Assembly: GCA_964106915.2 (NCBI GenBank)
Contig: OZ066919.1
Strand: one strand, 5' to 3'
Length of the DNA: 64,000 nucleotides
From: Podarcis gaigeae
Lineage: Eukaryota
Shown: positions 8,667 to 42,438 of the stretch, one piece after another
Numbering within the stretch: the stretch's first letter is position 1
Layout of the letters: every line of letters begins with the position of its first letter
Notes under the pieces: generated by a model
The model's input: the letters and a program-made list of their open reading frames with translations, nothing else
Database searches by the model: none
What the model was told of the DNA's origin: nothing
Position numbers and translations under genes: made by a program

Positions 8667-10266
8667 GTCTGGGGGATAAGGAACCTTTCATACAAGCAGA
8701 GTTCCCCTCAGCCTCCAATTTATCATGCAAGACAAAACTCACACATACAGAAATGAACTTCACCCCCTCTATACTCTCCCAATATTTTTGCCTGGTGACA
8801 TCACCAAATAGACTTCCGTTTAAAAATAAAGCAAAACTTAGAACTAGATGTTTGGGAGAAGAGTTTAGTGGTCTGACATTATAGTTTTCTGTATGCAGTG
8901 TGAAGATAAATGTGTTTCCATGTATTTGTTGCATGGATAGCATGCAATCATGCAACCTACATCCATCATTCAGTCAGTGCAACTGACATTTGGTACTTAA
9001 AAATGTTGTGTTTTGTCTGTAGTTTCTAGCATGGCACCCCCTCCCCATATGGATCCTTGAAGTTAATAGATTGTTTCCCACCTAATCCAGTAAGTGTGAA
9101 TTTAATCTGAAATGGGGGGGGGGCACCTCTATTTGGGGGTGGAGATGTGTTTCCCTCCCTCTAAGCCTGTTTTGACAAGTTTTGTCTGAAATGTTTTCTT
9201 TTTTTTAATCATTCTGAAAATGGCAGGAAAAGTTAGGTACTTAAAGCTTATTTTTAAACAGCATTTCAAAGTGAAGAAAGAGGCATGTAATTAATGTCTT
9301 TTTGCTGTTTTCTCTTGCACTTTAAAACATCTGGACATTAGTGTTGACAGACAGAGTCCTTAATCTTTTTCACTGTGTGCTCCAAGCCATATTTTTCTTC
9401 TCTGCTTTAGTGGCACCTGAGAAAAAAAAATCCAAAATACAGTCTACAGTGGTTGAAAAGGAACTGGTCCAGTGACTTTACTGCTAGAGCAACAGAAGAA
9501 CAGCAGCCATGGATGCCTGAGAATCAACACTCTTATGGCCCACCTACATCCATCTTGGCAGCTGGCAGTGGGTGAAAAAACAACTCCATCTGTGTACCAC
9601 TCGAGTAATTAGTCTATGCAGGTGAAATGTGGAAGGGATTACAGAGGTGCAGTCAGTAAATTAGGAATGAAACAAGTGTAACTCTAAAAGCCTACCTTTG
9701 AATTTACTTAAATAAATTATGACGGCAGATATTCAATTTCATATGTCTGGAGTAAAACGTCCCTCGTTTTCATGGCTGCTTTTGCTGCCAGAATCAGCCA
9801 TTTGGCTCTTTACGTTTGTGATTCCCATTTCAGCTAAGAGTGAGAGTCATACTGTGGACAATCTTCATGCGGTAATGTAGATCTTCTATTAACTCCTATG
9901 TATCAGATATTTCACTGAGGTGGGGCAATTTGTACCCTTCACATAACTGGAGACAGCTGTAGCTTCTGTTATCATATCTGAAATGCAGAATCAGTTGGTC
10001 CCTGGGAGTTTGACAGAACCCCCACTTTTCAATAAAATAAGACCGAAGCTTTTATGTGAGACAACTTTTTTGAAAGTATAGGTACACTGTGAATGAGGCA
10101 ATATCCAGTGGCCTCACAAAAAAAACAGTTGAACATCATGGAATCATAAAGAGGCATTTTCAGTAGCTGCCCACATGTAGAAAACTATTCTCCATGAGAT
10201 TCCCTGGGAACACATTTGAGAAACACCAGAGGATCTTTACATTTGGGACAAACATTTAGTAGCTAA

Positions 10267-10355
10267 GGCTGCAATCCTAATTATGTCTACTCAGATGTAA
10301 GTTCCACCGAACTCAGTGGGCTTACTCTCAGGTCAATGGGTTTAGGATTGCAGCC
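10267..10355. mobile_element. Small MITE, possibly PIF/Harbinger-like
   Basis: TIR ggctgcaatccta/taggattgcagcc; flanks taa/tac. Confidence 0.6.
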
Positions 10356-10438
10356 TACAATGGTGTGTGTTGGGAATGGGAACTCCTTGTAAATCAAATA
10401 GGGTGGTTGTTGTTCTTATTATTTTGCTAATCACATTG

Positions 10439-10819
10439 CAGACCCTCCAGCTGTCTCTGTTTTCCAAGGACAGTCCCGGTTCTTCAGAAGCCTTACTGGT
10501 TTCTGCTTTGATCCTGGAATGTCCTGCTTTTCCTTAGGACATCCCTATTTTCATTGGCGAAATGTTGGAACATATGGAGTTATGCGACACCCGAGCCAAG
10601 GACATAAGTAATTATACAAGCTTTAGAAGACATCTGAAGGCAGTCCTGTATAGGGAAGTAGTTTAATGTTTTATTATGTTTTTAAATATGTTGGAAGCTG
10701 CCCAGAGTGACTGGGGCAACGCAGTCAGATGGGTGGGGTATGAATGATAAAATCACTATTATTGTTGTTATGAAATAGGACATCCCTATTTTTTCATCAG
10801 AGAAATGTTGGAGGGTATG
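10439..10819. mobile_element. Composite hAT-like MITE
   Basis: TIR cagaccctcca/tggagggtatg; the right end is duplicated internally (~10538-10576); contains a LINE-tail-like segment. Confidence 0.65.
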
Positions 10820-12153
10820 ATGTTGATATCCAGATGGAGCCTCCAGGCAGGGCAGGGTATAATACCAAATAAATACATTCCGTCATAAACACACAATACT
10901 GGTCACATGGTAGCCATGGGGAAATAATTTGAAATCCCGTGACCCGCTGGTTCCTATGCACAGCCTGCAGCTTTTGGCACAGCACTGCAAATAATGTTTC
11001 TAGACTCCGTTTGCCAGTGACATGCCCATGACCGGCCGAGGGCTATGATGTGGGAGTTGCAAGAGTTTCCTGGAGGAACCATGTACAGATGTAGTGTTGG
11101 GGACAGGCCCAAAACTAGAGTGTGTGCCTTTAATCCCCGTTATCTGATGGCAGATTAACTGATCTAACCCAGTTTACACAGAAGACTGTATTAAAGAGAG
11201 ACATTTAAATCCTAGCTGCTCCACTTTGAGACTCATGTTTACTTAATCATGGTTATTTAAAACACTTCAAATTAGACCTTTGGCAACAGCAGTACAGTCT
11301 CAAATTGCAGCCCTGGTCTGATGCAGCTGTTTAGTCAGACGAGGTTTAGCTAGAGCTAACTATCTCAATAGATAGCATTAAAACATGCACGCAAAAAAAC
11401 TTTGTTGCTTTTTTTGGTGGTAGGGGGAGAGGAGAATTTTTCTAAAATTGGGTCACCCTGGATGTGCAAAACATCCCATTCAGTGGAGGAGAATGCATTC
11501 TTCTCTCTATCCCAAATCCCTATCCCAAACACCTGTACAAGATCAATATTCATCTGCATAGATATGTTTTGACTCATCCAATTGGCTCACATTGTTCCAA
11601 TTACATGGTTGTTGTAGAGCCAGGTTAGAATTTTTTTTGCCAAGAAGAAAAGGAAAGCCATTGATATTTTGTGGTTTCAGGACAGACTCTACACATTGAA
11701 AAGCCAGAACATTGTTTAAAAACAACCCTGTACATTAAACAGTTTTGAAACTAAAATATCTGAATTCTTTAAGGTTTAAAATATGAAACAGAAAATATGC
11801 TGCTGTCCACCTTTGGAATAAAAATGCTGAAAAGTAGTAAATTCAACTAGTTAAATCCATTCTACTTATATGTGACTTTTTTGTTCAGCAGCTTTATGCT
11901 AATAGGATGTTCGGGCCAATCCCCATGATTGACCCTGATTCTCCAGTAAAGAAGACTGCACTTTCTTGTAGCTTAAGAGCAAAATAACTGTCTTAAAAGT
12001 GCACTGGTCCTTTGAAAACAGCCTCATAGCTCGGCAGAGCTTCCTAGACTAAGCATGTGCTCTTGCAACATCTCAGAAAGCCTTGCTTGGATGGGCACCT
12101 TCATTAGGCGCCAGGCAAAAACATTGCTCTTCTTCCAGGCCTTTAGCTATTTA

Positions 12154-12192
12154 ACATACATACATACATACATACATACATACATACACACA
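12154..12192. repeat. (ACAT)n microsatellite
   Basis: Direct reading; a second tract lies at 12591-12629. Confidence 0.95.
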
Positions 12193-12590
12193 TGTTGTTG
12201 TTGTTTAGTTGTTTAGTCGTGTCCGACTCTTTGTGACCCATGGACCAGAGCACACCAGACACTGCTGTCTTCCACTGCCTCCTGCAGTTTTGGTCAAACT
12301 CATGCTGGTAGCTTCAAGAACACTATCCAAGCATCTTGTCCTCTGTCGTCCCCTTCTCCTTGTGGCCTCCATCTTTCCCAACATCAGGGTCTTTTACAGG
12401 GAGTCTTCTCTTCTCATGAGGTGGCCAAAGTATTGGAGTCTCAGCTTCAGGATCTGTCCTTCCAGTGAGCACTCAGGGCTGATTTCCTTAAGAATGGATA
12501 GGTTTGATCTTCTTGCAGTCCATGGAACTCACAATAGTCTCCTCTAGCACCATAATTCAAAAGCATCAATTCTTCGGCGATCAGCCTTCT
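12193..12590 (-). mobile_element. BovB 3' fragment
   Basis: Same 3' sequence and (TTG)n tail as the long copy; flanked on both sides by (ACAT)n. Confidence 0.93.
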
Positions 12591-13479
12591 ACATACATAC
12601 ATACATACATACATACATACATACATACAATTTTTGACCTTTTAAACTCTGTGTGTTTTGGGGGAGTGTACTGTACTGTTTTTGTTTGTTAGTATGTTAT
12701 GTGTTGTGTTAGTATGTTTTGTGTTTTTATATTGTAAACTGCCCTGTGATCCTCAAATGAAGGGCAGTATAGAAATTTAATAAATAAAATAAAATAAAAT
12801 AAGCTTGCAAATAAATAAAAGACAGAAAGAAACAGGACTCTTCTGTTTTGAAAATGAATAGTCAGCATGCTAAGTCTCTCAGTCTGCCTGATTTTAGAAG
12901 TCTCGTAGTGCTAATGATGGGAAATGCCCCCAAATAAATTACAGCTCTTTGGACTCTGCTTAAACTTTCTTATCAGTGACACACTGACTCATTGAAATAA
13001 TGCAGACACAGTGTCCGTTCTCAGCTGAAGTCAGAGTGCCCCTGACCTGTTTCAGTTCTGGCTTTCTGTATTACTTAGCTGAAAGATTTCTTGTATTCTT
13101 AGAGAGAGCTAGGATGGAAAGGAGAGGCATAGCGTTGGAAACCTGATTATCCATAAATGGACATTTCCCCGCATCCCTAATCATGAAGTCATTCGAGGAC
13201 ATTACTTCAGCTCCTTCCAGCTTGAGTTAGTCTGTGTGCAAATACTTGCATAAAGTGGAACAAAGCAAATGATAACATTGCCATTTCTCTCTCTGTTGGC
13301 ACCATGAAAAAAGTTAAAATTACTCAGAAGTAATGTGATAGTTGCAGTCTACAGATCAGTTACACCATAGCTTTTCAGTAGAGTTGCTCAGTGGGTGACT
13401 TGAGAGTAAGCAGTTTTATATTGGAGTAAATGGTATACTCCTCTTTCCTTGCCCTGCATGCACAAATTTGGGAAGTGCT

Positions 13480-13899
13480 AGCTATGGTTTTCCCAGTAGT
13501 GATGTATGGAAGTGAGAGCTGGACCATAAAGAAGGCTGATCGCCGAAGACTTGATGCTTCTGTATTATGGTGCTGGAGGAGACTCTTGAGAGTCCCATGG
13601 ACTGCAAGAAGATCAAACCTATCCATTCTGAAGGAAATCAGCCCTGAGTGCTCACTGGAAGGACAGATCCTGAAGCTGAGGGTCCAATACTTTGGCCACC
13701 TCATGAGAAGAGAAGACTCCCTGGAAAAGACCCTGATGTTGGGAAAGATGGAGGGCACAAGGAGAAGGGGACGACAGAGGACGAGATGGTTGGATAGTGT
13801 TCTTGAAGCTACAAACATGAGTCTGACCAAACTCCGGAAGGCAGTGGAAGCCAGGAGTGCCTGGAGTGCTCTGGTCCATGGGGTCACAAAGAGTCGGAC
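13480..13899 (+). mobile_element. BovB 3' fragment, tail missing
   Basis: ORF 13430-13918 contains AMVFPVVMYGSESW...HGVTKSRT, matching the BovB C-terminus. Confidence 0.93.
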
Positions 13900-14586
13900 C
13901 TTGTGTTCAGCTTTATAAACCCCCAACATCAAGCTATAAAACATAGTATGGCATCTACAGTTGGGTCGCCTGTTTTTAAGCAGTAACTCTGTAAAATGAC
14001 TCATGGATTTATTTCATAAAACTTACACACCGCGTGGTTGTAAAGAAAAACCTCAAAGCAGTTTACTCAAACTGTGATGTATATGGGTGTGCATCTGTGA
14101 AATCTACAGTGCTAGGGGAGGGCTGGGGCCTGTATATTTGATACCTGCATGCTATTCCCCCTTTCGCAACAAATAGCAGCTTTGAGATGATACAGACTTG
14201 CAAAATAATATGGGGCAGGGGAATTTAACTCCTCTGCAAGCAGCATGGTCTGATTACACCCCTGTAGCTTCTTTTAAAAAACAACATGGGAGACCAATCA
14301 CAGTTCTCCTGCCTTCTTATCTAGTATCTTAAATAAATACAGAACATTATGAATGCAGATTAAGAAGGATGATGCTCTGGAGCCGCTCCCATTCATTTCA
14401 ATGGAGTGTAGTGGAGAACTCCTCAGAGGTTTATGCCCTAGATGCATATACTGTATAAATGTTGCTCCAAAATCAACACTGGAACTCCGACATTTCCTAA
14501 ATGTGTAGGCACAGGGATTCTTATTCAGATTTTATTTTTATTTTTTTAAAAAACTTAGTTATTGAGACTTGTTCAAAGCTATACAA

Positions 14587-16826: not shown

Positions 16827-17974
16827 AAGGGCTTAATGATTAATTAGTCCCAGTGGAAGTTAAATCAGCAGTCATACAATATCCTTTGGGACCAACTCAT
16901 CAAGTTATTATGATTCACTTAAGGTCTTTAGTGTGTCTCTGGTGTGACTTTATAAAAGCAGCTTTCTCCTCAGCAGCACAAGTCCATTTGTGCTACCAAA
17001 CCATCTTTTCTGGCCTGTCAAAATGCTAGTTTGTCCTGGAGGGGGACAAGAAACAGGTCCTTGAAATGACTTCATTGGCACTCAGCTTTGACACGGCTAC
17101 TGCTACGCTACTGTGTCACAGCTATCTGCCACGGCAGCGGCTTATGGTGAATTCCCTCACATCCTGTTGACTTTTACACTTTGGAGTTCAAGGCGGGGGG
17201 GGGGGGGATGGCAGGACTCAGGTTAATGAGAGGTGGAATTGGCACAAACGCTGCCCAGTGGCTTCATGCTTATGAAATTTTGACTCAAATTACGTCAGGA
17301 GCTGTAAACCAGCAAGTGGCATGGCCTAAGCTGCTGCGATCACTGTTGAATACATAGGAGAGGTGGCAGGAGGGGGCAGAAGTAGCCCTTACAATATTTA
17401 TTTAGAAAGTGCATCTTGTTTTCATTTGTAGGCAAGCGAATTACGAAGATTCATGTGGTATTTGTAAATGGAAAAAGCAACACCGCCCTTGTTATGAATA
17501 AAACTTATGAAACGTTTAAAGGAAAACAGCTTTTTTTTTTTAGCCGAGCCTCGTGGTTTAACCGCATGAAATGTGTCCACTCGCATGGACATTTGCCTTT
17601 GAATTGCTAATATTCCCATAGAACAAATGGCATGTATGGTCCAACTCACTTGAAATAAATTCAGGGCTTCGCATGTGGAAGGACCCAAGTTCAATCCCTG
17701 ACATATCAAAGCAGGACTATGAAAAAACCATGCCTAACACCAAAGCTGTTTGCTGGGTTCGTTAGTGCATGTGTGTTTGGGAAGCAGGATCAGGAACGGC
17801 CTCTTGAGCATATTTTTCAGGAAATAGGGCATGAGAACAGCAGGAGTTTTAGGAAAGAGCAGGTGGGGGAACACTTGTGTGAATCAATGTGTCTCGAGAA
17901 TAGCAAAAGAACAGCATACAGTGCTACAGAATACTTCTATACCAACAGCATACTTAACAGAGGGGCAAATGGGA

Positions 17975-18370
17975 ACCTGGGAAGGTAGGGCATCAAGAAG
18001 AAGGAAAATGATCCTAAACCTATGCTGCCTTGCAGCATATCTTTTGGAGAAGAAAAGGCTAAGGAGCAAACCCTACACACATCCAGAGTGGAGACCCTAA
18101 GATGGTTGGAAGGTGCCTTGTACGCCTCCTTCTGGCAACTCCTGCAGACAACTTGGTGTCAAATGTATTGCTCTGCTTTCCTGTGGACCACATCAGCAAG
18201 GGTGGGGTGGGGTGGGGGGTTGGTGATCCTGCCTTCTGGGCAGCTCAGGTCCTCCACACAGACTGCCCAGGCTTGTGCCCTGAGGAGGTCACCTTGGTGC
18301 CCCAACACAGTGGTTTGACTTCACCCAGGAGGCATACTTCATTGTCTCTCAAGACAGATGGATGCCAACA
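17975..18370 (+). mobile_element. 5'-truncated second copy of the non-autonomous RTE-type element
   Basis: Colinear homology with ~26245-26620 (e.g. ggtgccttgtacg, ccttctggcaactcctgcag, ggaccacatcagcaag, gatggatgccaaca). Confidence 0.8.
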
Positions 18371-19523
18371 GGCTTGCACTGTTTACCAAGCCTAACGAAA
18401 CCTGGTCGGACTACAGGGTACTTTACAATCACCTGCTTCTGCAGTCCTAGGCAGGCATCAAAACAGGGCAGGTATTGAGTCTTTGTTGGTCTTGATTGTT
18501 GATTCAGCTTGGTAGGTCACAAGTAGTGAAGACTTTTCCAGTATCTGAAAAATCTTGTCACAGTGTTAACTTAAGTCAATGCACCTCCTTAGAGCATTGA
18601 GGAGAATATGAGAATTCATGAGGTCCTTTGCCCAGTATCTGTCTTTGCCCATGATATTAGTTTGATAAATGTTTGTGTGTGAGAGAAAATTCATACACGA
18701 AAAAAGCCTTTGCCTTTATCCTGGTTTCCACGACTTATGACATGCTTATCTTGACTGTATTCAAAATTCACCTTGCCAAGCCTAGATATCATGATTTGGA
18801 AATGATGCATTTTGTCCTGGCAGCATCTTGGGTCTAGCATTTCATTCTGATAAACATCAGAGATAAACATCAGAGAAATATAGCTAAGGGAAATAAGAAG
18901 AGCTGATTATAACTCAGTATGAAGTTTTGTGTGACAAGTTCCATTCATTGTGAGAACTCTTTGTTTCTTGCAAATGAGCTCTTTTGAATGCTGCTCTCCT
19001 GCAGAGTGCAATGTGCGTATCATCCATCAAAGCAAGAGTCAACGAAGGAAATGAGGACAGTTGATAACATGTTTCTTATGATAATGCCATTTTTCCATGA
19101 TTACCAAAGGCCAAAACTTATATATTCGAGGGAAAATGTTATGTTTTGAAAAACATTCAGAACTTCCCACACAATTTAGAGCTGAACTATTACAGAGAGC
19201 TGGGGGCATGGGAAGGTGTCTCCAGGACTAAAGTCACACAGGCAAAAGAAAGAAAGAAAAAAGGATTATGGGATGTTTTGTGTAGGAACTTTCCAGAGCA
19301 GAAAACAAACCAAGAGGATTATTTCCAGTACCAAGTACACACACATTGTCATCTTTCTTTTCTCTTCCCCAAACATATTATTGAACAAAGAACTAGTGTG
19401 ACATTAGAAATTCCCATATTTTCCAATGGCAGCTCAGCAACATACCTATACCCATGTATTGTTGGTTGTGTAATGGACTGCCTGTCATGGATTTTGGAAG
19501 CATTAAACTATCCTAGTATATTG

Positions 19524-25606: not shown

Positions 25607-25660
<54 letters not shown>
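25607..25660. repeat. (ATT)18 microsatellite
   Basis: Direct reading. Confidence 0.97.
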
Positions 25661-25937
25661 TGAACAAATAGCATCTTGGAGATAGGGTAAGGAATTTTTG
25701 GTAGCAAAACTGAAGAAAGAAGAGGGCTGTTGAGAAATGGCATTTCTACCCAAAATCAGCAGAAATGAGACTCAAACAAGCAAAAAAACATTTTTGTGCA
25801 TGAATTTATCAAACCTAATTCTGTTTCATTTAGAGAATCCCTTGTAAAAGAGAGTAGAAGGGTGCTTGCCTGAGGGCATTGGCTAATTACTTACTGTGAA
25901 AGCTGGCAGCTGTTTTTAAACTGATTGCCAACACAAT

Positions 25938-26119
25938 AGGGTGCATGGGATATTAGGGGAGCGATAGTACAACTGGTGGGGCTCAAAATATGCTCCTTTG
26001 TCCACCTTTGGTCCTCACTCTGCGCTCAGCTCTCACCTGTGGCTCCTAGAAGCTGTCAGCATGCGACAGCAGCCACACCCTTAGAGCGGCTTCAACTGGC
26101 AGGCTAAACCAGGTCAGGG
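25938..26119 (+). ncRNA. Putative degenerate HDV-like ribozyme at the element 5' end
   Basis: P1 agggtgc/acaccct, P2 ctctcacctgt/accaggtcaggg, P3 ggc/gcc, L3 starting tcc, J4/2 gctaa. The P1.1 GG is absent. Confidence 0.5.
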
Positions 26120-26621
26120 TAGCCGATGGGTCTCAAACCCTTAGTGAGACAGGCTTTGAGGGATTGATCAGACAAGACCAATAATGGGAGCAACTGTCAA
26201 GAAGGCATCTGAAGAGAGAAGTGGGGGGCAGAAGGGACTCATCATCCTGGGAAGGTAGAAGGAAATCTGGGGTCTTAAACCTCTGCTGCCTTGCAGGATA
26301 TCTTCAGGAGAAGAAAAAGCTGAGGAGTAAATCCTATACAAATCTGGAGTGGAGTCCCGAAAATGATTGGATGGTGCCTTGTACGTCTCCTTCTGGCAAC
26401 TCCTGCAGCCAATCTGGTGCCAAACGTATTGCTTTCCTTTCATTTGGACCACATCAGCAAGGCCTAGAGGGGGGACTTGTCATCTGGGCAGCCCAGGACC
26501 TCCATACACACCGCCCAGGCTTGCACCCTGGGGAAGTCACTTCGGTGCAGCTAGTGGAGTGGTTTGACTTCACCCCTGGAGGCACACTCCATTCTCTCCC
26601 GAGATAGATGGATGCCAACAA
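25939..26621 (+). mobile_element. Non-autonomous RTE-type retroelement (5'UTR plus 3' end), apparently full length
   Basis: RTE-5'UTR-like motifs (aaacctctgctgccttgc, ggagtaaatcct, ggagtggagtccc), a 3' stem-loop followed by CAA, a degenerate 20-bp TSD (25922-25941 / 26622-26641) and a second copy at 17975-18370. Confidence 0.7.
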
Positions 26622-29600
26622 TGATTGTCCATGCAATAGGGAAGGCAGGTGCCCCCCCCCAATCCAGGACTAACAGACACAAGTGACTGGTTATTCTGAA
26701 CATCACATTTGTTTTTACGTCCCATTTGATTCCATTTGTTTCTTTTGAATAAATAGGGGTTGTGTTGCAGATCTCGGATCCAGCAATATTTGTGCCTAAC
26801 CCCAGGGGATAAACTGAAGAAAATCCAGCATATTCCTCCAGAGTTATTAGCCATGATTCCTAGGATAGCTGCCTACTTCAGGAGATGCTTCCAGATGGTG
26901 GGCTTAATATTGCAAAACAAGTCATTTGGAATTGCAAATGGGATATTGGCATCAGGTTTTTTAAAGTCATATTTTCCATGGAAAAGGAAAATCTGGATTA
27001 AATTGCATGCGTGTTTGTGTGCCTATGGGGGGGGGGATATGCACCAATATTGTGATAATGATGACATGAGAGCACAGCCACCCAAAAGTGTGTCTTTTGG
27101 ACTCTGTGATCTCATGCAGGTCACATGACTTGCGCAGAGCCATGGATGGGAAGATGGGCATCCCGGTTCTGGGACTCAACTTGTTGGAGGGTATGTGGGT
27201 GGTGTGTGGAGAGCCACTGTGGGTAGATGGTGGAATGAGGAAGACTTAGATTTAAATACCCAGGTTCATTGGGTAGCTTGGGGAAGTCTTAATCATTCAA
27301 TCAGATATACCTGACTGGGTTGTTATGAAGATAAAATGAGATAATCCTGGGTAGGTTGTCTGTAGTTACCTGGTATTAAGCTCAGTAGGCCTCAGACGGG
27401 GAGTACTGAATCAGGTGATAATCAGAAAGCCAGCTCCATACAGCTTTTTGATGTAATACTCCCAAGCTCTGTAGTGTTCCTTCAGTCTTGGTCAGGAATG
27501 GCACCAGTGCAGGTATCCTCCAGGTGGCCCCCTCAGCAGTGGTGGCAGAGACCTCACTAAATGGACCTCTTGGTGGTGGTGCACCCTTTTCCTTACCTTG
27601 GTGGGGGTTGGCAGGCACAGCAAAACAACAACAGCTCCTGGTCTAGAGTGCTGCTGCTGGCACATGACATTTTAATTTCTCCAAAATTCCTTTGTGGCCT
27701 TGATTTGGCATTGCCTTGGAGCTGTGTCCTCTGGGATTAGCTTCAAGATACATGGTACGCTGTTTGAAGGGCTCATACCATTAACAGCTGCCTGCCAGTG
27801 CCTGACATCAGTGTGAAATGGCCAATTTCTTCCTATCCCTCTTTAGCAACAGATTGATTTCTGGCTTCTGCCTGCCTGCCACCCATCAAACACCTGTTTG
27901 CCCCCGTGTCCTTGCCTTGCCAGGTTTTGGTGTTGAAAGCATGGCACTTGGAAGAAGATTGAGGGGCGGGGGAGCATGTTAAAAATGTCTATTACTTCAA
28001 TTCCCCAAGGCCAGATGTGCTGGTAGCATTAGCCTACGTTCATCGCCTTGCATGACCACATCAGACAGAGAGGACACAGATGGACCGACAAAAGTCATAA
28101 AGAAAGGAAGCTATGTTTTCTCCTAACTTTGTCCAATTTCTGGTTTAACACAAATGGGCAACTGTAGCCGTGGATGACTGAAGTATACAGAAACATTAAT
28201 TTCGAAAGGGACAAGTAAAGACTGAAATAGCTCAGAAAGGGAGGAAGATGCAGTATATGGCCTTTTGGACATATAGATATCTCTGTGCTTTGGGAAGGAG
28301 ACCTGCTTCTATTCATTTATTTGCTTAACACTTCTAGGAGTGGATGGCCATGTTTTGAAAGTCTTCTCCCATCCTGCAAGTGTTGAAATGTTGTTAGTAA
28401 CAGATTGCTCACCGAATCTCACCGATTCCACATTCCTGAATGGGACCATATAACTTAACCTCGTGTACCGCTTGACTAGTGACTTCCTGTTAAAGTGACA
28501 CATGGGGTTCCATTTACACGGGAGATGCATTCAGATGGAACCGTTTCAGGGTGGGCCAAGAAGGAGTGCAAACGCATTATGTGCTGATTGATTGTGCTAG
28601 GTGGACTATAATTATGATTTACGCTCACATTCTTTTTTTTTCTTCCTTAAAAGGAAATCCCAGTTGCCAAATATGTTAATGGTGTATGTAATGGTGTGTT
28701 AACGGACACCATTACGACGCTGAACAAAATTAAACCTTTTGCCAAGACAAACCTTTTCAATAGTACATTTTATGGATCAGCAGACTTTGCAAATGCCTCA
28801 GAAAGTGGAACCATAGTGTGAGAAACAGGCCCTGGAAACAGCTAGCAGTTGCCTAACCACAAGCCAAACATACCTGTTAGTAATTAACTCTACATGGATG
28901 TTAATTTTATCATCTCATAAGTGCTATGCATAATTGCATAATTGTGATATTGTATAATATTTAATTACAGCTTGGGTTGTGATTTAGAAAACACATTTCT
29001 GGACCAGTTAATTTCGTGCCAAGGCACTCATGAAGACATGTATGAATACAAATGGCCATGGATTTCAGAACCAACATGAATATTAGAAAATATGCTGTTT
29101 AATAGGAAGAAGCCAAAAATGGAGAGTTTGAAGGAATGTTTGAAAGTTTTGTTTGATATTAATTATTTGTACAGCTTGCTGATTGGGCACAACTGGTTAA
29201 TTTGATAATGGCACCACTAGATTTTTGTAAGCAGTATGGTGGGAATTTTTGGTTAAAACAAAAGGCTTGTAGCTAATAAGTATGAAAAGGTTTTCTGGTA
29301 TTTTTGAGAGAATAACTAGGGGCCAGGATTCAGAAAGACATGAGAAGTGGAGTGCACTGTATCTTCAAAGACTATACTGAAGTGAACCTGGGGCAGAGAG
29401 AAAATGTAAAAGAGCTTAGAGGAAATGGTGTGAGACCCTAGAAAACTGAAATGAAATAAAAGTTAGCAAATTCCTAACAATTTGGTTAGACTGGATGTGT
29501 GTTTAGGTTGTTGGAAGACAGGTTGGCTGCATACATCTTCTAGGGCCAATATTCACTGTCTTCAGACAACATTTGATGTTTCTTGAGGAGCACTCATATA

Positions 29601-36154: not shown

Positions 36155-38900
36155 TTGTTGTTGTTGTTGTTGTTTAGTCGTTTAGTCGTGTCCGACTCTT
36201 CGTGACCCCATGGACCAGAGAACGCCAGGCACCTCTGTCCTCCACTGCCTCCCGCAGTTTGCTCAAACTCATGCTGGTAACCTCGAAAACACTATCCAAC
36301 CATCTCGTCCTCTGCCGTCCCCTTCTCCTTGTGCCCTCCATCTTTCCCAACATCAGGGTCTTCTCCAGGGAGTCTTCTCTTCTCATGAGGTGGCCAAAGT
36401 ACTGGAGCCTCAGCTTCACAATCTGTCCTTCCAGTGAGCACTCAGGGTTGATTTCCTTCAGTATGGAGAGGTTTGATCTTCTTGCAGTCCATGGGACTCT
36501 CAAGAGTCTCCTCCAGCACCATAATTCAAAAGCATCAATTCTTCGGCGATCAGCCTTCTTTATGGTCCAGCTCTCACTTCCATACATCACTACTGGGAAA
36601 ACCATAGCTTTAACTATACGAACCTTTGTTGGCAAGGTGATGTCTCTACTTCTCAAGATGCTGTCTAGGCCTGTCATTGCCCTTCTCCCAAGAAGCAGGC
36701 GTCTTTTAATTTCGTGGCTGCTGTCACCATCTGCAGTGATCATTGAGCCCAAGAAAGTAAAATCTCTCACTACCTCCATTTCTTCCCCTTCTATTTGCCA
36801 GGAGGTGATGGGACCAGTGGCCATGATCTTCGTTTTTTTGATGTTGAGCTTCAGACCATATTTTGCGCTCTCCTCTTTCACCCTCATTAAAAGGTTCTTT
36901 AATTCCTCCTCACTTTCTGCCATCAAGGTTGTGTCATCTGCATATCTGAGGTTGTTGATATTTCTTCCGGCAATCTTAATTCCGGCTAGGGATTCATCCA
37001 GCCCAGCCTTTCGCATGATGAATTCTGCATATAAGTTAAATAAGCAGGGAGACAAAATACAGCCTTGTCGTACTCCTTTCCCAATTTTGAACCAATCAGT
37101 TGTTCCATATCCAGTTCTAACTGTAGCTTCTTGTCCCACATAGAGATTTCTCAGGAGACAGATGAGGTGATCTGGCACTCCCATTTCTTTAAGAACTTGC
37201 CATAGTTTGCCGTGGTCGACACAGTCAAAAGCTTTTGCATAGTCAATGAAGCAGAAGTAGATGTCTTTCTGGAACTCTCTAGCTTTCTCCATAATCCAGC
37301 GCATGTTTGCAATTTGGTCTCTGGTTCCTCTGCCTCTTCTAAATCCAGCTTGCACTTCTGGGAGTTCTCGGTCCACATACTGCTTGAGCCTTCCTTGTAG
37401 AATTTGAAGCATAACCTTGCTAGCGTGTGAAATGAGTGCAATTGTGCGGTAGTTGGAGCATTCTTTGGCACTGCCCTTCTTTGGGATTGGGATGTAGACT
37501 GATCTTCTCCAATCCTCTGGCCACTGCTGAGTTTTCCAAACTTGCTGGCATATTGAGTGTAGCACCTTAACAGCATCATCTTTTAAAATTTTAAATAGTT
37601 CAGCTGGAATGCCATCACTTCCACTGGCCTTGTTATTTGCAGTGCTTTCTAAGGCCCATTTGACTTCACTTTCCAGGATGTCTGGCTCAAGGTCAGCAAC
37701 CACACTACCTGGGGTATACGAGACATCCATTTCTTTCTGGTATAATTCCTCTGTGTATTCTTGCCACCTCTTCTTGATGTCTTCTGCTTCTGTTAGGTCC
37801 TTTCCACTTTTGTCCTTTATTGTGGAAATCTTTGTACGAAATGTTCCTTTCATATCTCCAATTTTCTTGAACAGATCTCTGGTTCTTCCCATTCTATTGC
37901 TTTCCTCTATTTCTTTGCATTGCTCGTTTAAGAAGGTCTTCTTGTCTCTCCTTGCTATTCTTTGGAAATCTGCATTCAATTTCCTGTATCTTTCACCATC
38001 TCCCTCGCATTTTGCTTGCCTTCTCTCCCCCGCTATTTGTAAGGCCTCATTGGACAGCCACTTTGCTTTCTTGCATTTCCTTTTCATTGGGATGGTTTTC
38101 GTTGCTGCCTCCTGTATAATGTTACGAGCCTCCATCCATAGTTCTTCAGGCATTCTGTCCACCAAATCTAAATCCTTAAACCTGTTCCTCACTTCCACTG
38201 TGTATTCATAAGGGATTTGACTTAGATTGTATCTTACCGGCCCAGTGGTTTTTCCTACTTTCTTCAGTTTAAGCTTGAATTTTGCTATAAGAAGCTGATG
38301 ATCTGAGCCACAGTCAGCTCCAGGTCTTGTTTTTGCTGACTGTATAGAGCTTCTCCATCTTTGGCTGCAGAGAATATAATCAATCTGATTTCGATGCTGC
38401 CCATCTGGTGATGTCCATGTGTAGAGTCGTCTCTTGTGTTGTTGGAAAAGCGTGTTTGTGATGACCAGCTTGTTCTCTTGACAGAACTCTATTAGCCTTT
38501 GCCCTGCTTCGTTTTGATCTCCAAGGCCAAACTTGCCAGTTGTTCCTTTTATCTCTTGACTCCCTACTTTAGCATTCCAATCCCCTATAATGAGAAGAAC
38601 ATCCTTCTTTGGTGTCACTTCTATAAGGTCTTGTAAGTCTTCATAGAATTGGTCAATTTCAGTTTCTTCAGCACAAGTAGTTGGTGCATAAACTTGGATT
38701 ACTGTGATGTTAAAAGGTCTGCCTTGGATTCGTATCGAGATCATTCTATCATTTTTGAGATTGCATCCCAGTACAGCTTTCGCCACTCTTTTGTTGACTA
38801 TGAGGGCCACTCCATTTCTTTTATGGGTTTCTTGCCCACAGTAGTAGATATGATGGTCATCCGAACTGAATTCACCCATTCCCGTCCATTTTAGTTCACT
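36155..38900 (-). mobile_element. BovB LINE, ~2.75 kb, 5'-truncated, young
   Basis: Intact ORF plus (CAA)n tail, seen as (TTG)n at 36155-36173. No TSD visible. Confidence 0.95.
36174..38879 (-). CDS. BovB (RTE clade) LINE ORF: APE endonuclease plus reverse transcriptase, N-terminally truncated
   Basis: 901-aa uninterrupted ORF with EN motifs VYAPT, GDWNAKVG, NQIDYIL, GSDH and RT motifs FIDYAKAFD, GVRQGCILSP, LRYADD. The frame stays open upstream to 38900 (SELKWTG), where homology stops. Confidence 0.95.
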   Translation of the reverse strand: MGEFSSDDHHIYYCGQETHKRNGVALIVNKRVAKAVLGCNLKNDRMISIRIQGRPFNITVIQVYAPTTCAEETEIDQFYEDLQDLIEVTPKKDVLLIIGDWNAKVGSQEIKGTTGKFGLGDQNEAGQRLIEFCQENKLVITNTLFQQHKRRLYTWTSPDGQHRNQIDYILCSQRWRSSIQSAKTRPGADCGSDHQLLIAKFKLKLKKVGKTTGPVRYNLSQIPYEYTVEVRNRFKDLDLVDRMPEELWMEARNIIQEAATKTIPMKRKCKKAKWLSNEALQIAGERRQAKCEGDGERYRKLNADFQRIARRDKKTFLNEQCKEIEESNRMGRTRDLFKKIGDMKGTFRTKISTIKDKSGKDLTEAEDIKKRWQEYTEELYQKEMDVSYTPGSVVADLEPDILESEVKWALESTANNKASGSDGIPAELFKILKDDAVKVLHSICQQVWKTQQWPEDWRRSVYIPIPKKGSAKECSNYRTIALISHASKVMLQILQGRLKQYVDRELPEVQAGFRRGRGTRDQIANMRWIMEKAREFQKDIYFCFIDYAKAFDCVDHGKLWQVLKEMGVPDHLICLLRNLYVGQEATVRTGYGTTDWFKIGKGVRQGCILSPCLFNLYAEFIMRKAGLDESLAGIKIAGRNINNLRYADDTTLMAESEEELKNLLMRVKEESAKYGLKLNIKKTKIMATGPITSWQIEGEEMEVVRDFTFLGSMITADGDSSHEIKRRLLLGRRAMTGLDSILRSRDITLPTKVRIVKAMVFPVVMYGSESWTIKKADRRRIDAFELWCWRRLLRVPWTARRSNLSILKEINPECSLEGQIVKLRLQYFGHLMRREDSLEKTLMLGKMEGTRRRGRQRTRWLDSVFEVTSMSLSKLREAVEDRGAWRSLVHGVTKSRTRLND

Positions 38901-39384: not shown

Positions 39385-39758
39385 TTTTGAATTATGGTGC
39401 TGGAGGAGACTCTTGAGAGTCCCATGGACTGCAAGAAGATCAAACCTCTCCATACTGAAGGAAATCAACCCTGAGTGCTCACTGGAAGGACAGATTGTGA
39501 AGCTGAGGCTCCAGTACTTTGGCCACCTCATGAGAAGAGAAGACTCCCTGGAGAAGACCCTGATGTTGGGAAAGATGGAGGGCACAAGGAGAAGGGGGCG
39601 ACAAAGGACGAGATGGTTAGATAGTGTTTTCGAGGTTACCAGCATGAGTTTGACCAAACTGCGGGAGGCAGTGGAGGACAGAGGTGCCTGGCGTTCTCTG
39701 GTCCATGGGGTCACGAAGAGTCGGACACGACTAAACGACTAAACAACAACAACAACAA
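39385..39758 (+). mobile_element. BovB 3' fragment, same subfamily as the 36155-38900 copy
   Basis: Encodes FELWCWRR...TRLND, has a (CAA)n tail and a perfect 12-bp TSD atgtgctttgat (39373-39384 / 39759-39770). Confidence 0.95.
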
Positions 39759-42438
39759 ATGTGCTTTGATAACTCCTAAACAGCCATATGCATATTACTG
39801 CCTTTGAAACATGGGGTGTTATAAATTTCAGGCCTTCATATTTATGAAAGGATCTTCACCAGTGGGAAGTTGAAACTGCCTGGGTATCCCATGCTACCAA
39901 GTCTAGTTGTGCATGTGGCAAATTAAAGGCAGGGAGGTCTCACTAGAAGATCTGTGAAAGACTTTAATGCAGAGAAAGTTAATACAATCTAAAGTGTTAA
40001 AAGGGTCTTGAAAGATTTGCGGCATCATAGAACGGTGATTGTCCTGAAATTTAAGGGGAATGTTTAACATGCTTATGGAAAAATAAAACTATTTATTAAC
40101 CTGCCTTGACAGGTTTCTTTTTTTCTGGTAAAATTCTTGCTAGTTTATTCTCCAAGAATGGAGTATTATTTTCGGTTGAGGAAAGACTATACCCTGTCTA
40201 TAATCTGCTTTATGGTGTCCATCCATTCTGGGGCAGTTATTCTCTTTGAATCATTGTGTGCACCTAAAAATTCTATGAAGCTTCAACATGTTTCTTGGGT
40301 TCCCCTGCAAAGAAATTTTCTATACTCAGAAGTTTATTTTAAATAGGAAAAATATTATATGAAATAAATCATATGGAAGTATTTATCAGCACTCACTTCT
40401 TTAACTTTTCCAGTGTCTGGTTTCAAAACCCATTTCCAAATGACTGAAGTTCATACATGGTCTTTAAAAAAAAAAGTTTCAGAAGAAAATGTTTTAGGAA
40501 AATTACCTCAGGGTTTATTGTGTACTTATTCTGGGTTAAATAATAATAATAATGCAACATAGGAAAATGAGTTTATTAAGAACAGAAGGAAAATGGCAAA
40601 GAAGCAGGGAAGATTTTTGACAGAAAAAAAGGTCTGGTTTGTCATAGAACAATTACTCCAAAATAGTAGGTTGGGAGGCCCACCCCCTTCTTTGGCTTAC
40701 AGGAGTCTCTAGGGGAGGGTGACATTAGCAAGGGAAATAACCTTGCCAGTCACTTGACCCAAGTGATTGCTTCCCCAAAAAGTCACTAGAGTGGCACAGG
40801 AATGCAGCTGATGTGGAAAAAGGCCCCAAACCTTACTGATGATACGGGTTTATGTAGACCTAACACTGCAGATGAGTTCTGCCATACACCTGTACCCACA
40901 CCAGAGTTCTAAGTGCGAGGAGATTCTGTTTCTCTTTTTTATTATTATTTAATATAGAGGCATGCTCAAACATGAAATCCCACACCTCTCGTTTATGATT
41001 ATCCCACACCAATGCCAACTAGTTTGTGAACCTTTACGGCAGTTTCGTTAACAAATGATGCCATTTTTCATCTCTTCATTTATAAAGTTCCTTATAAATG
41101 CTGCACCAGCATAAAGACACCGTATTCAGACTGCTTCACAGAAGCAGGTTTTCCCAAAGAGAAGTTACTTATGTGTGAGAAATGGTGGTTTTGCACATGC
41201 AGTTTGTCATGTGTGATGGATGCACATGTGCTTTTTGTGTGTGTTGTGATTCGGTTCCATAGGATGAGGAGCCACGAGAAAACTGCCATGTGTATGTGTG
41301 CCTAAATTGATGGGATATATGCTTTCCCTTCCATCACATGCAGTGGATTACCTGCAGGTTTCATACACAGAAGAAGCATTCCTGTATCACTGAATCTCAT
41401 ATGAAACAGTCCAAGACAGGGCAGCCCCCTATCCAGAACACAAAAAGGGAATGTCTTCTCTTCCCAAATGCTTCTTCTGTTTGCAAATGAGATTATCCCG
41501 AGGAAAGCATCTGTGTGTTTTCTTTTAACTGAGTCAGCAGAAATAGTGACAGTTGGCAACCTCAGCTGGGAACAGTAAGACATCTTGTGCAACATACTTT
41601 ATTCTCCACAGGTTGCTGAGAGGTACCGTAACATAGCATTACCGATAAAACTGCGTTTTCCCCCTCCCCCTCTCTCTAAAGGGTTATAAAATAACTCTGC
41701 AAATGCCCCGCTCTCCACCTCATCACAGATGTCCTGGCAAGCTCTGCAGTCCAGTCCCTCTTCTCAGCATTTCAGTGATTTGCCCCAAGTGAAATTATGG
41801 CTTCAAATGTCAGAAAGGAGTTGGTAGTTTATAGACGAAAGCTATTGTAAACATGTGCAAGATATTTCTGTGGATGATGCAGAACCAAATTCTGGCTTAA
41901 CTGCTACGGATTGGGGAAAAAAATCTGGATAAGATCTGCAGTTGATTTAAATTTAAGGTTGCCAGGTTGCAGACCAGAAACCTGCACTGTTTTTATTTAT
42001 TTTTATTTTTTACACTCTTCAGGGCAGCAAGGGCCACCAACTTTTGGCCCCTAGCCAATTTCTTTTCTGCCCTTATTGCCCATTTCTTCCTCCTCCCATA
42101 CCCAGCTGCTGTGTGTGCCACAACTGCCCTTGACTTAATTATAGGGGAGGTCAGATAGCAGGGAAGAAATAGGAATGGTTGGGAGAATCAACAACTGCCT
42201 CACCTCCTACTGCATTAAATGTGCAGCACCATCACAAACCCAAGAAAAGCCTTGTTGGATCAAGCCAAAGACTCCTTTAGTTTAGCATCCTGTTCTCACA
42301 GCGGCCAACCAGATACCCATGGGAATCTGGGAAGCCAAACAGCATTCCCCTCGCTTGTGATTTCCATTAGCTGATATTCAGAGTCATACTACTTTGCCAG
42401 TGAAAGTTCTATAGGACACAGCCATCAGGAAGCAAGAT

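What the first reader, a model, noticed from the sequence alone, without database searches (positions are those of the whole stretch)
25938..26119. HDV-like ribozyme fold with an extra hairpin in L3, sitting exactly at the 5' end of a non-coding retroelement
Seen: the segments occur in HDV double-pseudoknot order. P1a agggtgc (25938-25944), a long J1/2, P2a ctctcacctgt (26030-26040), P3a ggc, L3 tcctagaa, P3b gcc (26072-26074), P1b acaccct (26075-26081), an imperfect P4 (cggct/ggcag), J4/2 gctaa with the putative catalytic C at 26104, and P2b accaggtcaggg (26108-26119). P1a starts at the left TSD boundary, where self-cleavage would define the element's 5' end. Unusually, a 6-bp hairpin gctgtc/gacagc (26052-26070) is inserted at the 3' side of L3. 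Established: RTE, R2 and related non-LTR retrotransposons use HDV-like ribozymes to process their 5' ends, with insertions usually in J1/2 or P4. Inference: this is a structural variant used by a ribozyme-headed non-autonomous family. This copy lacks the P1.1 GG and is probably dead, and an alternative tgtggct/agccaca stem competes with the fold.
Basis: partly seen in the sequence, partly recalled or inferred. Interest (0 to 1): 0.85.

Follow-up and report, generated by a model that had tools for sequence, protein, structure and literature searches.

The report
Decayed HDV-like ribozyme heading RTE derivative
This stretch is a worn-out copy of a self-cutting RNA of the hepatitis-delta type that sits at the front of a small protein-less jumping element in a lizard genome. 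Related copies from other animals still carry the textbook version, so the kind of thing is already known, but this lizard version has an unusual extra hairpin.

Summary
On its own the fold is no better than chance. Relatives change the verdict.

The element (25942-26621, with a 20-nt target-site duplication) is an ORF2-deleted derivative of an RTE-clade LINE: 5'UTR, ORF1 remnant and 3' stem-loop with a CAA tail.

Two divergent relatives carry a canonical HDV-like core at the same place, upstream of ORF1. One is a crab contig (L123). The other is a full-length autonomous element (L132).
- Both have a 3-bp P3, a 7-nt L3 (UCCAAGC or UCCUCGC) and GG right after P1b.
- Both have a C in J4/2 (GCUAA or GCAGAA), and paired changes keep P2, P3 and P4.
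- In L132, P1a is nucleotides 1-7 of the element and pairs perfectly.

A second copy (L131) shares that hairpin and keeps the GG.

The window copy has lost P1.1 and has mismatches in P1, P2 and P4, so it is very probably dead. Whether the hairpin version ever cleaved is untested. I could not collect genome-wide copies.

The parts
25922..25941 (+). Left copy of the target-site duplication (tgattgccaacacaataggg)
   Evidence: 16 of 20 identical to 26622-26641 (family D5). The right copy starts immediately after the 3' end shared with other copies.
25938..25944 (+). P1a (agggtgc); predicted cleavage site just 5' of 25938
   Evidence: 6 of 7 Watson-Crick pairs with 26075-26081. It is the only such heptamer inside the element's 5' region; one identical heptamer lies outside at 25859. 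It overlaps the TSD by 4 nt.
25945..26029 (+). Long J1/2 (85 nt)
   Evidence: J1/2 is also long in the relatives: 49 nt in L123 and about 168 nt in L132. R2 ribozymes have J1/2 of 216-498 nt (PMC3774820). tggtcctca at 26009-17 is shared with L123 9827-35.
26030..26040 (+). P2a
   Evidence: Pairs with 26108-26119, with one C-C mismatch (26034/26115). Aligned to P2 of L123 by model R2; pair table.
26041..26043 (+). P3a (ggc)
   Evidence: Pairs with gcc 26072-74. Same as L123 (GGC/GCC). L132 has GCC/GGC, with the middle pair flipped.
26044..26051 (+). L3, 5' part (tcctagaa). It keeps U, CC and the G at position 6 of the HDV L3 pattern.
   Evidence: Compare L123 TCCAAGC and L132 TCCTCGC. Identical tcctagaa in L131.
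26052..26071 (+). Inserted hairpin in L3 (gctgtc agcatgc gacagc, then a)
   Evidence: Model R2 places a 22-nt insertion after UCCUAG relative to L123. Absent in L123 and L132, present in L131 (acggtc agcatgt gacaga).
26072..26074 (+). P3b (gcc)
26075..26081 (+). P1b (acaccct), directly after P3b
   Evidence: Homologous to L123 ACACCCC and L131 ACATCCT.
26082..26086 (+). J1/4. The P1.1 partner is lost: ta where the relatives have GG.
   Evidence: L123 GG 9879-80, L131 GGG, L132 GG 202-203.
26087..26102 (+). Short P4 (cggc / gcag) with loop ttcaactg; g-a mismatch
   Evidence: L123 has ctgc/gcgg, 4 pairs. L132 has a longer P4, 207-226.
26103..26107 (+). J4/2 gctaa with the candidate catalytic C at 26104
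   Evidence: GCTAA is identical in L123, CTAA in L131, GCAGAA in L132. HDV genomic has GCGAA (my knowledge). A similar ggcgaCTAAACC is seen by eye in L125 and L126.
26108..26119 (+). P2b
26120..26220 (+). Rest of the 5'UTR
   Evidence: Colinear with L131 169-300.
26221..26579 (+). Degenerate ORF1 remnant. Nucleotide homology to ORF1 runs to about 26546. The deletion junction with the 3'-end piece lies between about 26547 and 26579. The open frame itself runs on to 26607.
   Evidence: phmmer found 22 hits down to E=5e-18. The homologs lie directly upstream of EN+RT ORF2 in L129, L130 and L132. Nucleotide homology 26258-26546 to L129 ORF1.
26580..26621 (+). 3' end of the LINE: terminal stem-loop 26581-26616 and tail aacaa
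   Evidence: 83% identical to L125 14483-14524, the 3' end of a full-length element. The stem-loop is conserved in the second window copy. L123 ends with (CAA)4.
26622..26641 (+). Right copy of the target-site duplication
17961..18371 (+). Second, 5'-truncated copy of the same family (no ribozyme region)
   Evidence: 79-83% identical to 26222-26621. The sequence upstream is no more similar to the window 5' part than shuffled sequence is.

Best explanation
25938-26119 is a decayed copy of a genuine HDV-like self-cleaving ribozyme. The ribozyme forms the 5' end of a 680-bp, ORF2-deleted derivative of an RTE-clade LINE, made of a 5'UTR, an ORF1 remnant and the 3' stem-loop with a CAA tail.

**Inferred mechanism in working members.** The element is transcribed as part of a longer host transcript. 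P1a, the first 7 nt of the element, pairs with the 7 nt that directly follow P3/L3. The double pseudoknot forms across a long J1/2, and the C of J4/2 catalyses cleavage just 5' of P1a. That defines the 5' end of the RNA that the RTE machinery copies into new sites.

**This copy.** It carries a 22-nt hairpin insertion in L3 that it shares with a related copy. It has also lost the P1.1 GG and has mismatches in P1, P2 and P4. A stronger local hairpin competes with the fold. It is therefore very probably inactive.

**Shown:** the homology, the canonical cores in relatives, and the position at element 5' ends. **Inferred:** catalysis and its role in 5' processing.
For: (1) **Family.** The ORF 26221-26607 has 22 homologs. 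In L129, L130 and L132 these sit directly upstream of an EN+RT ORF2 of 1042-1046 aa. L132 ORF2 is 29% identical to the window's BovB ORF2 over 957 aa, E=4e-121. The last 42 nt match the 3' end of a full-length element.

(2) **Canonical cores in relatives.**
- L123 9848-9916: P2 of 9 bp, GGC-TCCAAGC-GCC, ACACCCC, GG, a 4-bp P4, GCTAA.
- L132 176-238: P2 of 6 bp, GCC-TCCTCGC-GGC, GACACAC, GG, a 7-bp P4, GCAGAA. The MFE of this core equals that nested structure.
- A strict core descriptor hits exactly these sites and gives 0 hits in 20 shuffled 64-kb windows. It also returned five weaker hits in real sequence, with AT-rich P3 and P2 of 6-7 bp.

(3) **The window is homologous to the L123 core.** BLAST gives 82% over 50 nt. 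Model R2 gives 40.8 bits, E=4e-9, and model R3 gives 26.5 bits, E=2e-5.

(4) **Changes on both sides keep pairing between L123 and L132:** 3 pairs in P2, 1 in P3 and 1 in P4.

(5) **P1a at the element's 5' end.**
- L132 nt 1-7, GTGTGTC, pairs 7 of 7. The contig runs from there to the 3' tail, and a second assembly starts at the same base.
- In L123 it is 9 nt inside the start defined by a 9-nt perfect TSD.
- In the window it overlaps the TSD by 4 nt.

(6) **Established knowledge.** HDV-like ribozymes process the 5' ends of RTE, R2, Baggins and L1Tc elements (PMC6765202; PMC3774820, citing Ruminski 2011). In R2, J1/2 can be hundreds of nt and P4 can be absent (PMC3774820).
Against: - Rfam's HDV-clan models hit none of these sequences, not even L132.
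- The single-sequence models recognise each other only weakly: L132 scores 11.6 bits, E=0.7, although it is the top hit.
- Only three sequences carry a complete core, and only two carry the hairpin, so covariation counts are small. The alignment used was also fitted to the structure.
- P1a in L123 is 9 nt inside the TSD-defined start, not at it.
- Other family members lack a recognisable core (L129/L130, L125, L126).
- No cleavage was measured.
- Genome-wide copies could not be gathered.
Confidence: 0.8

Rival explanations
1. The hairpin-bearing form was itself an active ribozyme in the master element of the lizard subfamily. This is the reader's 'structural variant': an HDV-like fold with an extra helix emerging from the 3' side of L3. 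It defined the 5' end of the RNAs that gave rise to this copy.
For: - The insertion is shared by two copies that are about 29% diverged (window and L131). It was therefore in their common master, and that master kept spreading.
- L131 keeps the GG, and both copies keep tcctag (U, CC and the G at position 6).
- The window copy, made from a hairpin-bearing RNA, starts at P1a within 4 nt.
- The insert sits at the 3' end of L3, where length already varies: 7 nt in L123 and L132, and 8 nt, U20-U27, in HDV (PMC1874588).
- From memory only: U27 is dispensable in HDV.
Against: - I know of no HDV-like ribozyme with a helix in L3. In R2 elements the P1.1/P3/L3 block is highly conserved (PMC3774820).
- The hairpin shows no compensatory change between the two copies. 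L131 has 2 of 6 pairs broken.
- In the window the hairpin stacks on an alternative stem that destroys P3 and P1 (-18.0 against -10.5 kcal/mol).
- A 5' end at P1a is also expected for any full-length copy, however that end is made.
Confidence: 0.35
2. The ribozyme is real in the wider RTE family, but the 22-nt insertion inactivated it, or was neutral after it was already inactive, in the lizard subfamily. That subfamily then spread with 5' ends set by something else, such as a transcription start or read-through processing.
For: - The L3/P1.1 region is the active site, and an insertion there is the simplest way to lose activity.
- Other lineages of the family have clearly lost the core and still produced near-identical young copies. 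L129 and L130 are 99.85% identical, start at a TATA-like site and keep only tcctggc...gcagaa remnants.
- There is no covariation in the hairpin.
Against: - The flanking active-site letters (tcctag, GG in L131, CTAA) are still kept in copies about 29% diverged.
- The window copy begins at P1a and not at some other site.
Confidence: 0.45
3. The HDV-like appearance is a chance resemblance. The conserved 5'UTR block serves another role (promoter, translation start, protein binding) or none.
For: - The window fold alone is at chance level.
- There are no Rfam hits anywhere.
- Sequences are few.
Against: - Two divergent relatives, L123 and L132, have little primary-sequence similarity in the core: no BLAST match there and only a weak model match. 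Yet both meet a strict descriptor (3-bp P3, 7-nt L3 starting UCC, GG after a 7-nt P1b, C.AA before P2b, P2 of at least 6 bp). That descriptor gave 0 hits in 1.28 Mb of shuffled sequence.
- Both hits lie in the 5'UTR upstream of ORF1.
- L132 adds a perfect 7-bp P1 at nucleotide 1.
Confidence: 0.08

Closest known systems
HDV-like ribozymes at the 5' ends of RTE-clade non-LTR retrotransposons (Ruminski et al. 2011, as cited in PMC3774820 and PMC6765202; the drz-Agam-2 type is from my knowledge)
   Same: - Same element clade: an EN+RT ORF2 colinear with BovB.
- Same position, at the first nucleotides of the element and upstream of the ORFs.
- Same fold order, a 3-bp P3, a 7-nt L3 starting UCC, P1.1 formed by GG, and a C in J4/2.
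- Same presumed role of freeing the element's 5' end from a co-transcript.
   Different: - This lineage is found in lizards, a crab contig, a sea urchin and marine metagenomes, and is not matched by the Rfam models.
- J1/2 is long (49-168 nt).
- The lizard subfamily has a 22-nt hairpin inside L3.
- The window element has lost ORF2.
R2 element HDV-like ribozymes (PMC3774820)
   Same: - Long J1/2: 216-498 nt in silkmoths, with P1 and P1' up to more than 700 nt apart.
- Weak or absent P4, and few conserved letters outside L3, P3, P1.1 and the catalytic C.
- Variable 5' junctions explained by microhomology when cleavage is at the element end.
   Different: R2 is specific to the 28S rDNA site and often uses 28S sequence for P1. 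This element is dispersed, and its P1a is element sequence. No L3 insertion is described for R2.
Genomic HDV ribozyme
   Same: - L132's P3 and L3 (GCC UCCUCGC GGC) are letter for letter those of the genomic HDV ribozyme, minus U27. The HDV sequence is from my knowledge; the L3 range U20-U27 is given in PMC1874588.
- GG follows P1b.
- J4/2 is G-C-N-A-A.
   Different: - The first P1 pair is G-C or A-U here, not the G-U wobble.
- J1/2 is far longer and P4 is short.
- The window copy lacks P1.1 and has the L3 hairpin.
ORF-less or internally deleted LINE derivatives mobilised in trans through a shared 3' end (RTE/BovB-dependent non-autonomous elements)
   Same: It keeps the 3' stem-loop and microsatellite tail that RTE-type reverse transcriptases recognise. 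It has no ORF2 and has a TSD.
   Different: It has no Pol III head. It keeps the parent LINE's 5'UTR with the ribozyme and most of ORF1.

Membership tests
HDV-like self-cleaving ribozyme | Segment order P1-J1/2-P2-P3-L3-P3'-P1'-J1/4-P4-J4/2-P2' (nested double pseudoknot) | tested here: met
   Window. L123 and L132. In the window alone this order is at chance level.
HDV-like self-cleaving ribozyme | P1 of about 7 bp whose 3' strand directly follows P3' | tested here: met
   Window 6 of 7, L123 6 of 7, L132 7 of 7.
HDV-like self-cleaving ribozyme | 3-bp P3 closing an L3 of about 7-8 nt | tested here: not met
   Window: P3 is 3 bp but L3 is 28 nt, with a 22-nt insert. Met in the relatives L123 and L132, which have 7 nt.
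HDV-like self-cleaving ribozyme | P1.1: two pairs between L3 (CC) and the two bases after P1' (GG) | tested here: not met
   The window has TA at 26082-83. Met in L123, L131 and L132.
HDV-like self-cleaving ribozyme | Conserved C in J4/2, just before P2' | tested here: met
   C26104 lies in GCTAA. That motif is identical in L123, is CTAA in L131 and is GCAGAA in L132.
HDV-like self-cleaving ribozyme | Match to curated covariance models (Rfam HDV clan) | tested here: not met
   No hit for the window, L123 or L132, even at E<=10. The models appear blind to a long J1/2.
HDV-like self-cleaving ribozyme | Mg2+-dependent self-cleavage 5' of P1, abolished by mutating the J4/2 C | not testable with these tools
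   Needs an in vitro transcription and cleavage assay.
RTE-clade non-LTR retrotransposon (non-autonomous derivative) | Parent with an APE-type endonuclease plus reverse transcriptase ORF2 related to RTE/BovB | tested here: met
   Relatives L129, L130 and L132 have Exo_endo_phos plus RVT_1. L132 ORF2 is 29% identical to BovB ORF2 over 957 aa. The window element itself has no ORF2.
RTE-clade non-LTR retrotransposon (non-autonomous derivative) | 3' end shared with the parent LINE, with a short microsatellite tail | tested here: met
   26580-26621 is 83% identical to the L125 3' end. Tails are caa in the window, (CAA)4 in L123 and (TGA)2 in L132. The terminal stem-loop is conserved.
RTE-clade non-LTR retrotransposon (non-autonomous derivative) | Target-site duplication flanking the insertion | tested here: met
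   20 nt, 16 of 20 identical. L123 has a 9-nt perfect repeat.
RTE-clade non-LTR retrotransposon (non-autonomous derivative) | Placement in the RTE clade by an RT phylogeny | not tested
   Only a pairwise comparison with BovB was made. No tree was built.

The most novel reading that the evidence does not exclude
The lizard subfamily carries a working HDV-like ribozyme with an additional helix growing out of the 3' side of L3, at the edge of the active site. To my knowledge no natural HDV-like ribozyme has a helix there. This variant would have defined the 5' ends of an ORF2-less RTE derivative that spread in squamates. The same ORF2-deleted element, without the hairpin, is present in a crab genome, which would imply cross-phylum transfer of a ribozyme-headed non-autonomous element.
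Probability: 0.3. Interest if true: 0.7.

Novelty: new member of a known kind. Interest (0 to 1): 0.5.

Why it matters
- **Known mechanism, new case.** HDV-like ribozymes are the known way many promoter-less non-LTR elements free their 5' ends. This adds an RTE lineage, present in lizards, a crab, a sea urchin and marine metagenomes, that Rfam's models miss completely because J1/2 is long. Such ribozymes are probably under-counted in vertebrate genomes.
- **Survival in a stripped-down element.** The ribozyme travels with an ORF2-deleted, protein-less derivative.
- **A natural test of the active site.** The shared hairpin inside L3 is a natural experiment on how much the active-site loop tolerates. 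If the hairpin form cleaves, it widens the known structural range of the fold and would change how search descriptors are written.

Tried and rejected
- **Sequencing runs.** No reads could be laid, so there is no genome-wide copy collection or 5'-end pile-up.
- **Rfam.** Gathering and E<=10 scans of the window, L123 and L132 gave no HDV-clan hit. The only hit was a chance NiCo riboswitch match, 18 bits against a cut-off of 64.5.
- **Initial view, now rejected.** I first took the fold for pure chance, because of z=0.02, the descriptor counts equal to shuffles, and no second copy of the 5' 280 nt in the window. The relatives overturned this.
- **Protein word search.** The search for homologous proteins with the element ORF found nothing.
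- **DNA scans of collections.** One metagenome scan was blank. The second metagenome scan and the genome-collection scan gave only chance matches of about 20 nt. The viral scan was blank.
- **Zootoca loci.** The two loci reached through BovB proteins (43 kb) hold no copy.
- **Missing DNA.** Two look-ups returned no DNA because the sample file was too large.
- **Cross-recognition of models.** Model R1 (from L132) finds only itself. R3 finds no further cores in L122, L124, L125, L126 or L129.
- **Alternative compact fold.** A fold using the hairpin as P3 (P3 gtc/gac, L3 agcatgc) was rejected. It has no UCC, no GG and no J4/2, and it is not kept in L131.
- **MAFFT.** It could not align L132 with the others, so the pair table uses the model-fitted alignment.

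Full report
**What is in the sequence**

- P1a agggtgc 25938-44 pairs with 26076-81 through six Watson-Crick pairs. c25944/a26075 is a mismatch.
- P2a 26030-40 pairs with P2b 26108-19, with one C-C mismatch.
- P3 is ggc/gcc (26041-43 and 26072-74).
- L3 starts tcctagaa. It is followed by the hairpin gctgtc-agcatgc-gacagc (26052-70).
- P1b follows P3b directly.
- After P1b comes ta, not gg.
- P4 is cggc/gcag with a g-a mismatch.
- J4/2 is gctaa, with C26104.

The competing stem is real and stronger. The local hairpin 26038-26077 folds at -18.0 kcal/mol, against -10.5 for P3 plus the L3 hairpin.

**Taken alone, the fold is at chance level**

- The MFE z-score is 0.02.
- Rfam gives no HDV-clan hit at the gathering score or at E<=10.
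- Requiring TCC at the start of L3 and C.AA before P2b still gives 16 hits, against 11-34 in shuffles.
- A canonical-type descriptor finds nothing starting in 25900-26000.
- The 5' 280 nt have no second copy in the window.

At that point I rated the finding as a probable chance pattern.

**What the element is**

The host is a lacertid lizard. A BovB ORF2 at 36174-38879 (-) is 95% identical to Podarcis muralis proteins.

A second copy in the window, 17961-18371, shares only 26222-26621, at 79-83% identity. Both copies end at ...gatggatgccaaca. Immediately after that end in copy 1 lies a 20-nt stretch, 26622-41, that repeats 25922-41 at 16 of 20 positions. The insertion is therefore 25942-26621. 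The first four bases of P1a (aggg) are present in both repeat copies, as microhomology or as target sequence.

The 128-codon frame 26221-26607 had no word-index hits. An exhaustive phmmer search found 22 short homologs, down to E=5e-18. They come from Podarcis lilfordi, the crab Petrolisthes cinctipes, the sea urchin Diadema setosum, and ENA and Logan contigs.

Fetching their DNA showed that this frame is ORF1 of an RTE-type LINE:
- In L129 and L130 (3,982 bp, two copies 99.85% identical) and in L132, it lies directly upstream of an EN+RT ORF2 of 1042-1046 aa.
- L132 ORF2 is colinear with BovB ORF2 at 29% identity, E=4e-121.
- The window's last 42 nt match the 3' end of a full-length element (L125, 83%).
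- They form a terminal stem-loop that is conserved in copy 2.

The element is thus 5'UTR, ORF1 remnant and 3' end, with ORF2 deleted. This refines the companion note s1-698131.

**The relatives carry a textbook core**

The crab-contig copy, L123, matches window 26072-26119 at 82%. It reads P2a(9848-56)-tt-GGC-TCCAAGC-GCC-ACACCCC-GG-taca-ctgc-ttcaactg-gcgg-GCTAA-ac-P2b(9908-16). That is a 3-bp P3, a 7-nt L3 with no hairpin, GG to pair with the CC of L3, and a 9-bp P2.

The full-length element L132 has little primary-sequence similarity to L123 in this region but the same architecture:
- P2 176-181 with 233-238.
- GCC-TCCTCGC-GGC. From my knowledge this is the genomic HDV P3 and L3, minus U27.
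- GACACAC, then GG.
- A 7-bp P4 at 207-226.
- GCAGAA as J4/2.

Its MFE is exactly this nested structure.

P1a of L132, GTGTGTC, is nucleotides 1-7 of the contig and pairs 7 of 7 with P1b. The contig runs from there to the 3' tail ...gatgccaatgatga, and a second assembly starts at the same base. Position 1 is therefore very probably the end of the element.

A strict core descriptor requires all of the following:
- a Watson-Crick P3;
- an L3 of 6-8 nt starting T[CT]C;
- P1.1 pairing;
- C.AA before P2b;
- a P2 of at least 6 bp.

It hits exactly these two sites and gives nothing in 20 shuffled 64-kb windows. It also returned five weaker hits in real sequence, with AT-rich P3 and P2 of 6-7 bp.

**Link back to the window**

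- A covariance model built from the L123 core alone finds window 26029-26120 at 40.8 bits, E=4e-9.
- A model built from L123 plus L132 gives 26.5 bits, E=2e-5. The next best hit in 90 kb scores 15 bits.
- With filters off, the L123 model's top hit in 74 kb is the L132 core, in register, though at only 11.6 bits.
- In the fitted alignment, L123 and L132 differ on both sides while keeping the pair at three P2 pairs, one P3 pair and one P4 pair.
- In that alignment the window breaks one P2 pair (C-C) and one P4 pair (G-A).

P1a lies near the TSD-defined 5' end in both TSD-bounded copies. In the window it starts 4 nt before that end. In L123 it starts 9 nt inside it. It is the only heptamer with at least 6 of 7 pairs in L123's 5' region.

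**The hairpin**

L131, a Logan contig, is 71% identical to the window over 26037-26620 and has the same ORF2-deleted layout. It is truncated at P2a/P3a. It has tcctagaa-acggtc-agcatgt-gacaga-g-gcc-acatcct-GGG.

The L3 hairpin was therefore present in the common master of these two copies, and the GG was ancestral. L123 and L132 lack the hairpin, so it is a derived insertion.

Between the two hairpin copies there is no compensatory change, and 2 of 6 pairs are broken in L131. Its function remains open.

The insert sits at the 3' end of L3, where length already varies: 7 nt in L123 and L132, and U20-U27 in HDV (PMC1874588). From memory, U27 is dispensable in HDV. I could not confirm that in the library.

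**Comparison with what is known**

- HDV-like ribozymes at the 5' ends of RTE, R2, R4, Baggins and L1Tc elements are established (PMC6765202; PMC3774820, citing Ruminski 2011).
- In R2, P1 and P1' can be 23 to more than 700 nt apart. J1/2 is 216-498 nt in silkmoths. P4 can be absent. 5' junctions vary through microhomology when cleavage is at the element end (PMC3774820).
- Long J1/2, weak P4 and a fuzzy junction here are therefore ordinary for this class.
- An L3 insertion is not described in the sources I read.
- Library searches for HDV-like ribozymes together with BovB or Anolis found nothing relevant.

**Limits**

- Only three complete cores and two hairpin copies support the argument.
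- Rfam misses all of them, even L132. That is a blind spot of those models, not evidence against the ribozyme.
- Other members lack a recognisable core or keep only remnants of it (L129/L130, L125, L126).
- No catalysis was measured.

**Verdict**

This is a dead copy of a real HDV-like ribozyme that heads an ORF2-deleted RTE derivative. It is a new member of a known kind. The shared L3 hairpin is the one feature that could make it a new structural variant if it proves active.

Noticed in passing
L123:9783-10315; L125:~10000-14531; L126-L128; L129:9862-13843; L132:1-4132: The same RTE-clade family occurs at 66-78% nucleotide identity in a lacertid, a Petrolisthes cinctipes (crab) contig, Diadema setosum (sea urchin), Tara metagenome scaffolds and other contigs. 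The crab contig shares nothing else with the window, so it is not lizard contamination. The ORF2-deleted form has the same deletion junction in the window, L131 and L123. The patchy spread resembles horizontal transfer, as with BovB.
   Followed up: partly
L132:1-300; L123:9700-10000: Rfam 15 finds no HDV-clan match even for L132's textbook core (L3 UCCUCGC, GG, GCAGAA). A long J1/2 (49-168 nt) seems to hide retrotransposon HDV-like ribozymes from the curated models.
   Followed up: yes
L129:9862-10000 and L130:4906-5044: Two 99.85% identical full-length copies start at a TATA-like tataaaa. That site corresponds to the inside of J1/2 in L132. They keep only tcctggc...gcagaa remnants of the core, so the ribozyme has apparently been lost in an active lineage.
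   Followed up: partly
window 36174-38879 (-), tail near 36150; 39420-39760: A BovB LINE with a 901-aa EN+RT ORF, 95% identical to Podarcis muralis proteins, ending in cgactaaa(caa)n. An inverted fragment of a BovB 3' end lies about 500 nt beyond its 5' side.
   Followed up: partly
window 25859-25865: An identical AGGGTGC heptamer lies 79 nt upstream of P1a, outside the element. It could equally pair with P1b. I take it to be chance.
   Followed up: no
The Rfam gathering scan of the whole window reported no hammerhead.
   Followed up: no
L122:10299-10355: A mascRNA/menRNA match (74 bits, E=2e-13) in the Podarcis lilfordi locus. The gene model called there is probably a MALAT1/NEAT1-type lncRNA region that happens to contain a repeat copy.
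   Followed up: no
window 25608-25660: An (ATT)n microsatellite of about 17 units lies 280 nt upstream of the element.
   Followed up: no
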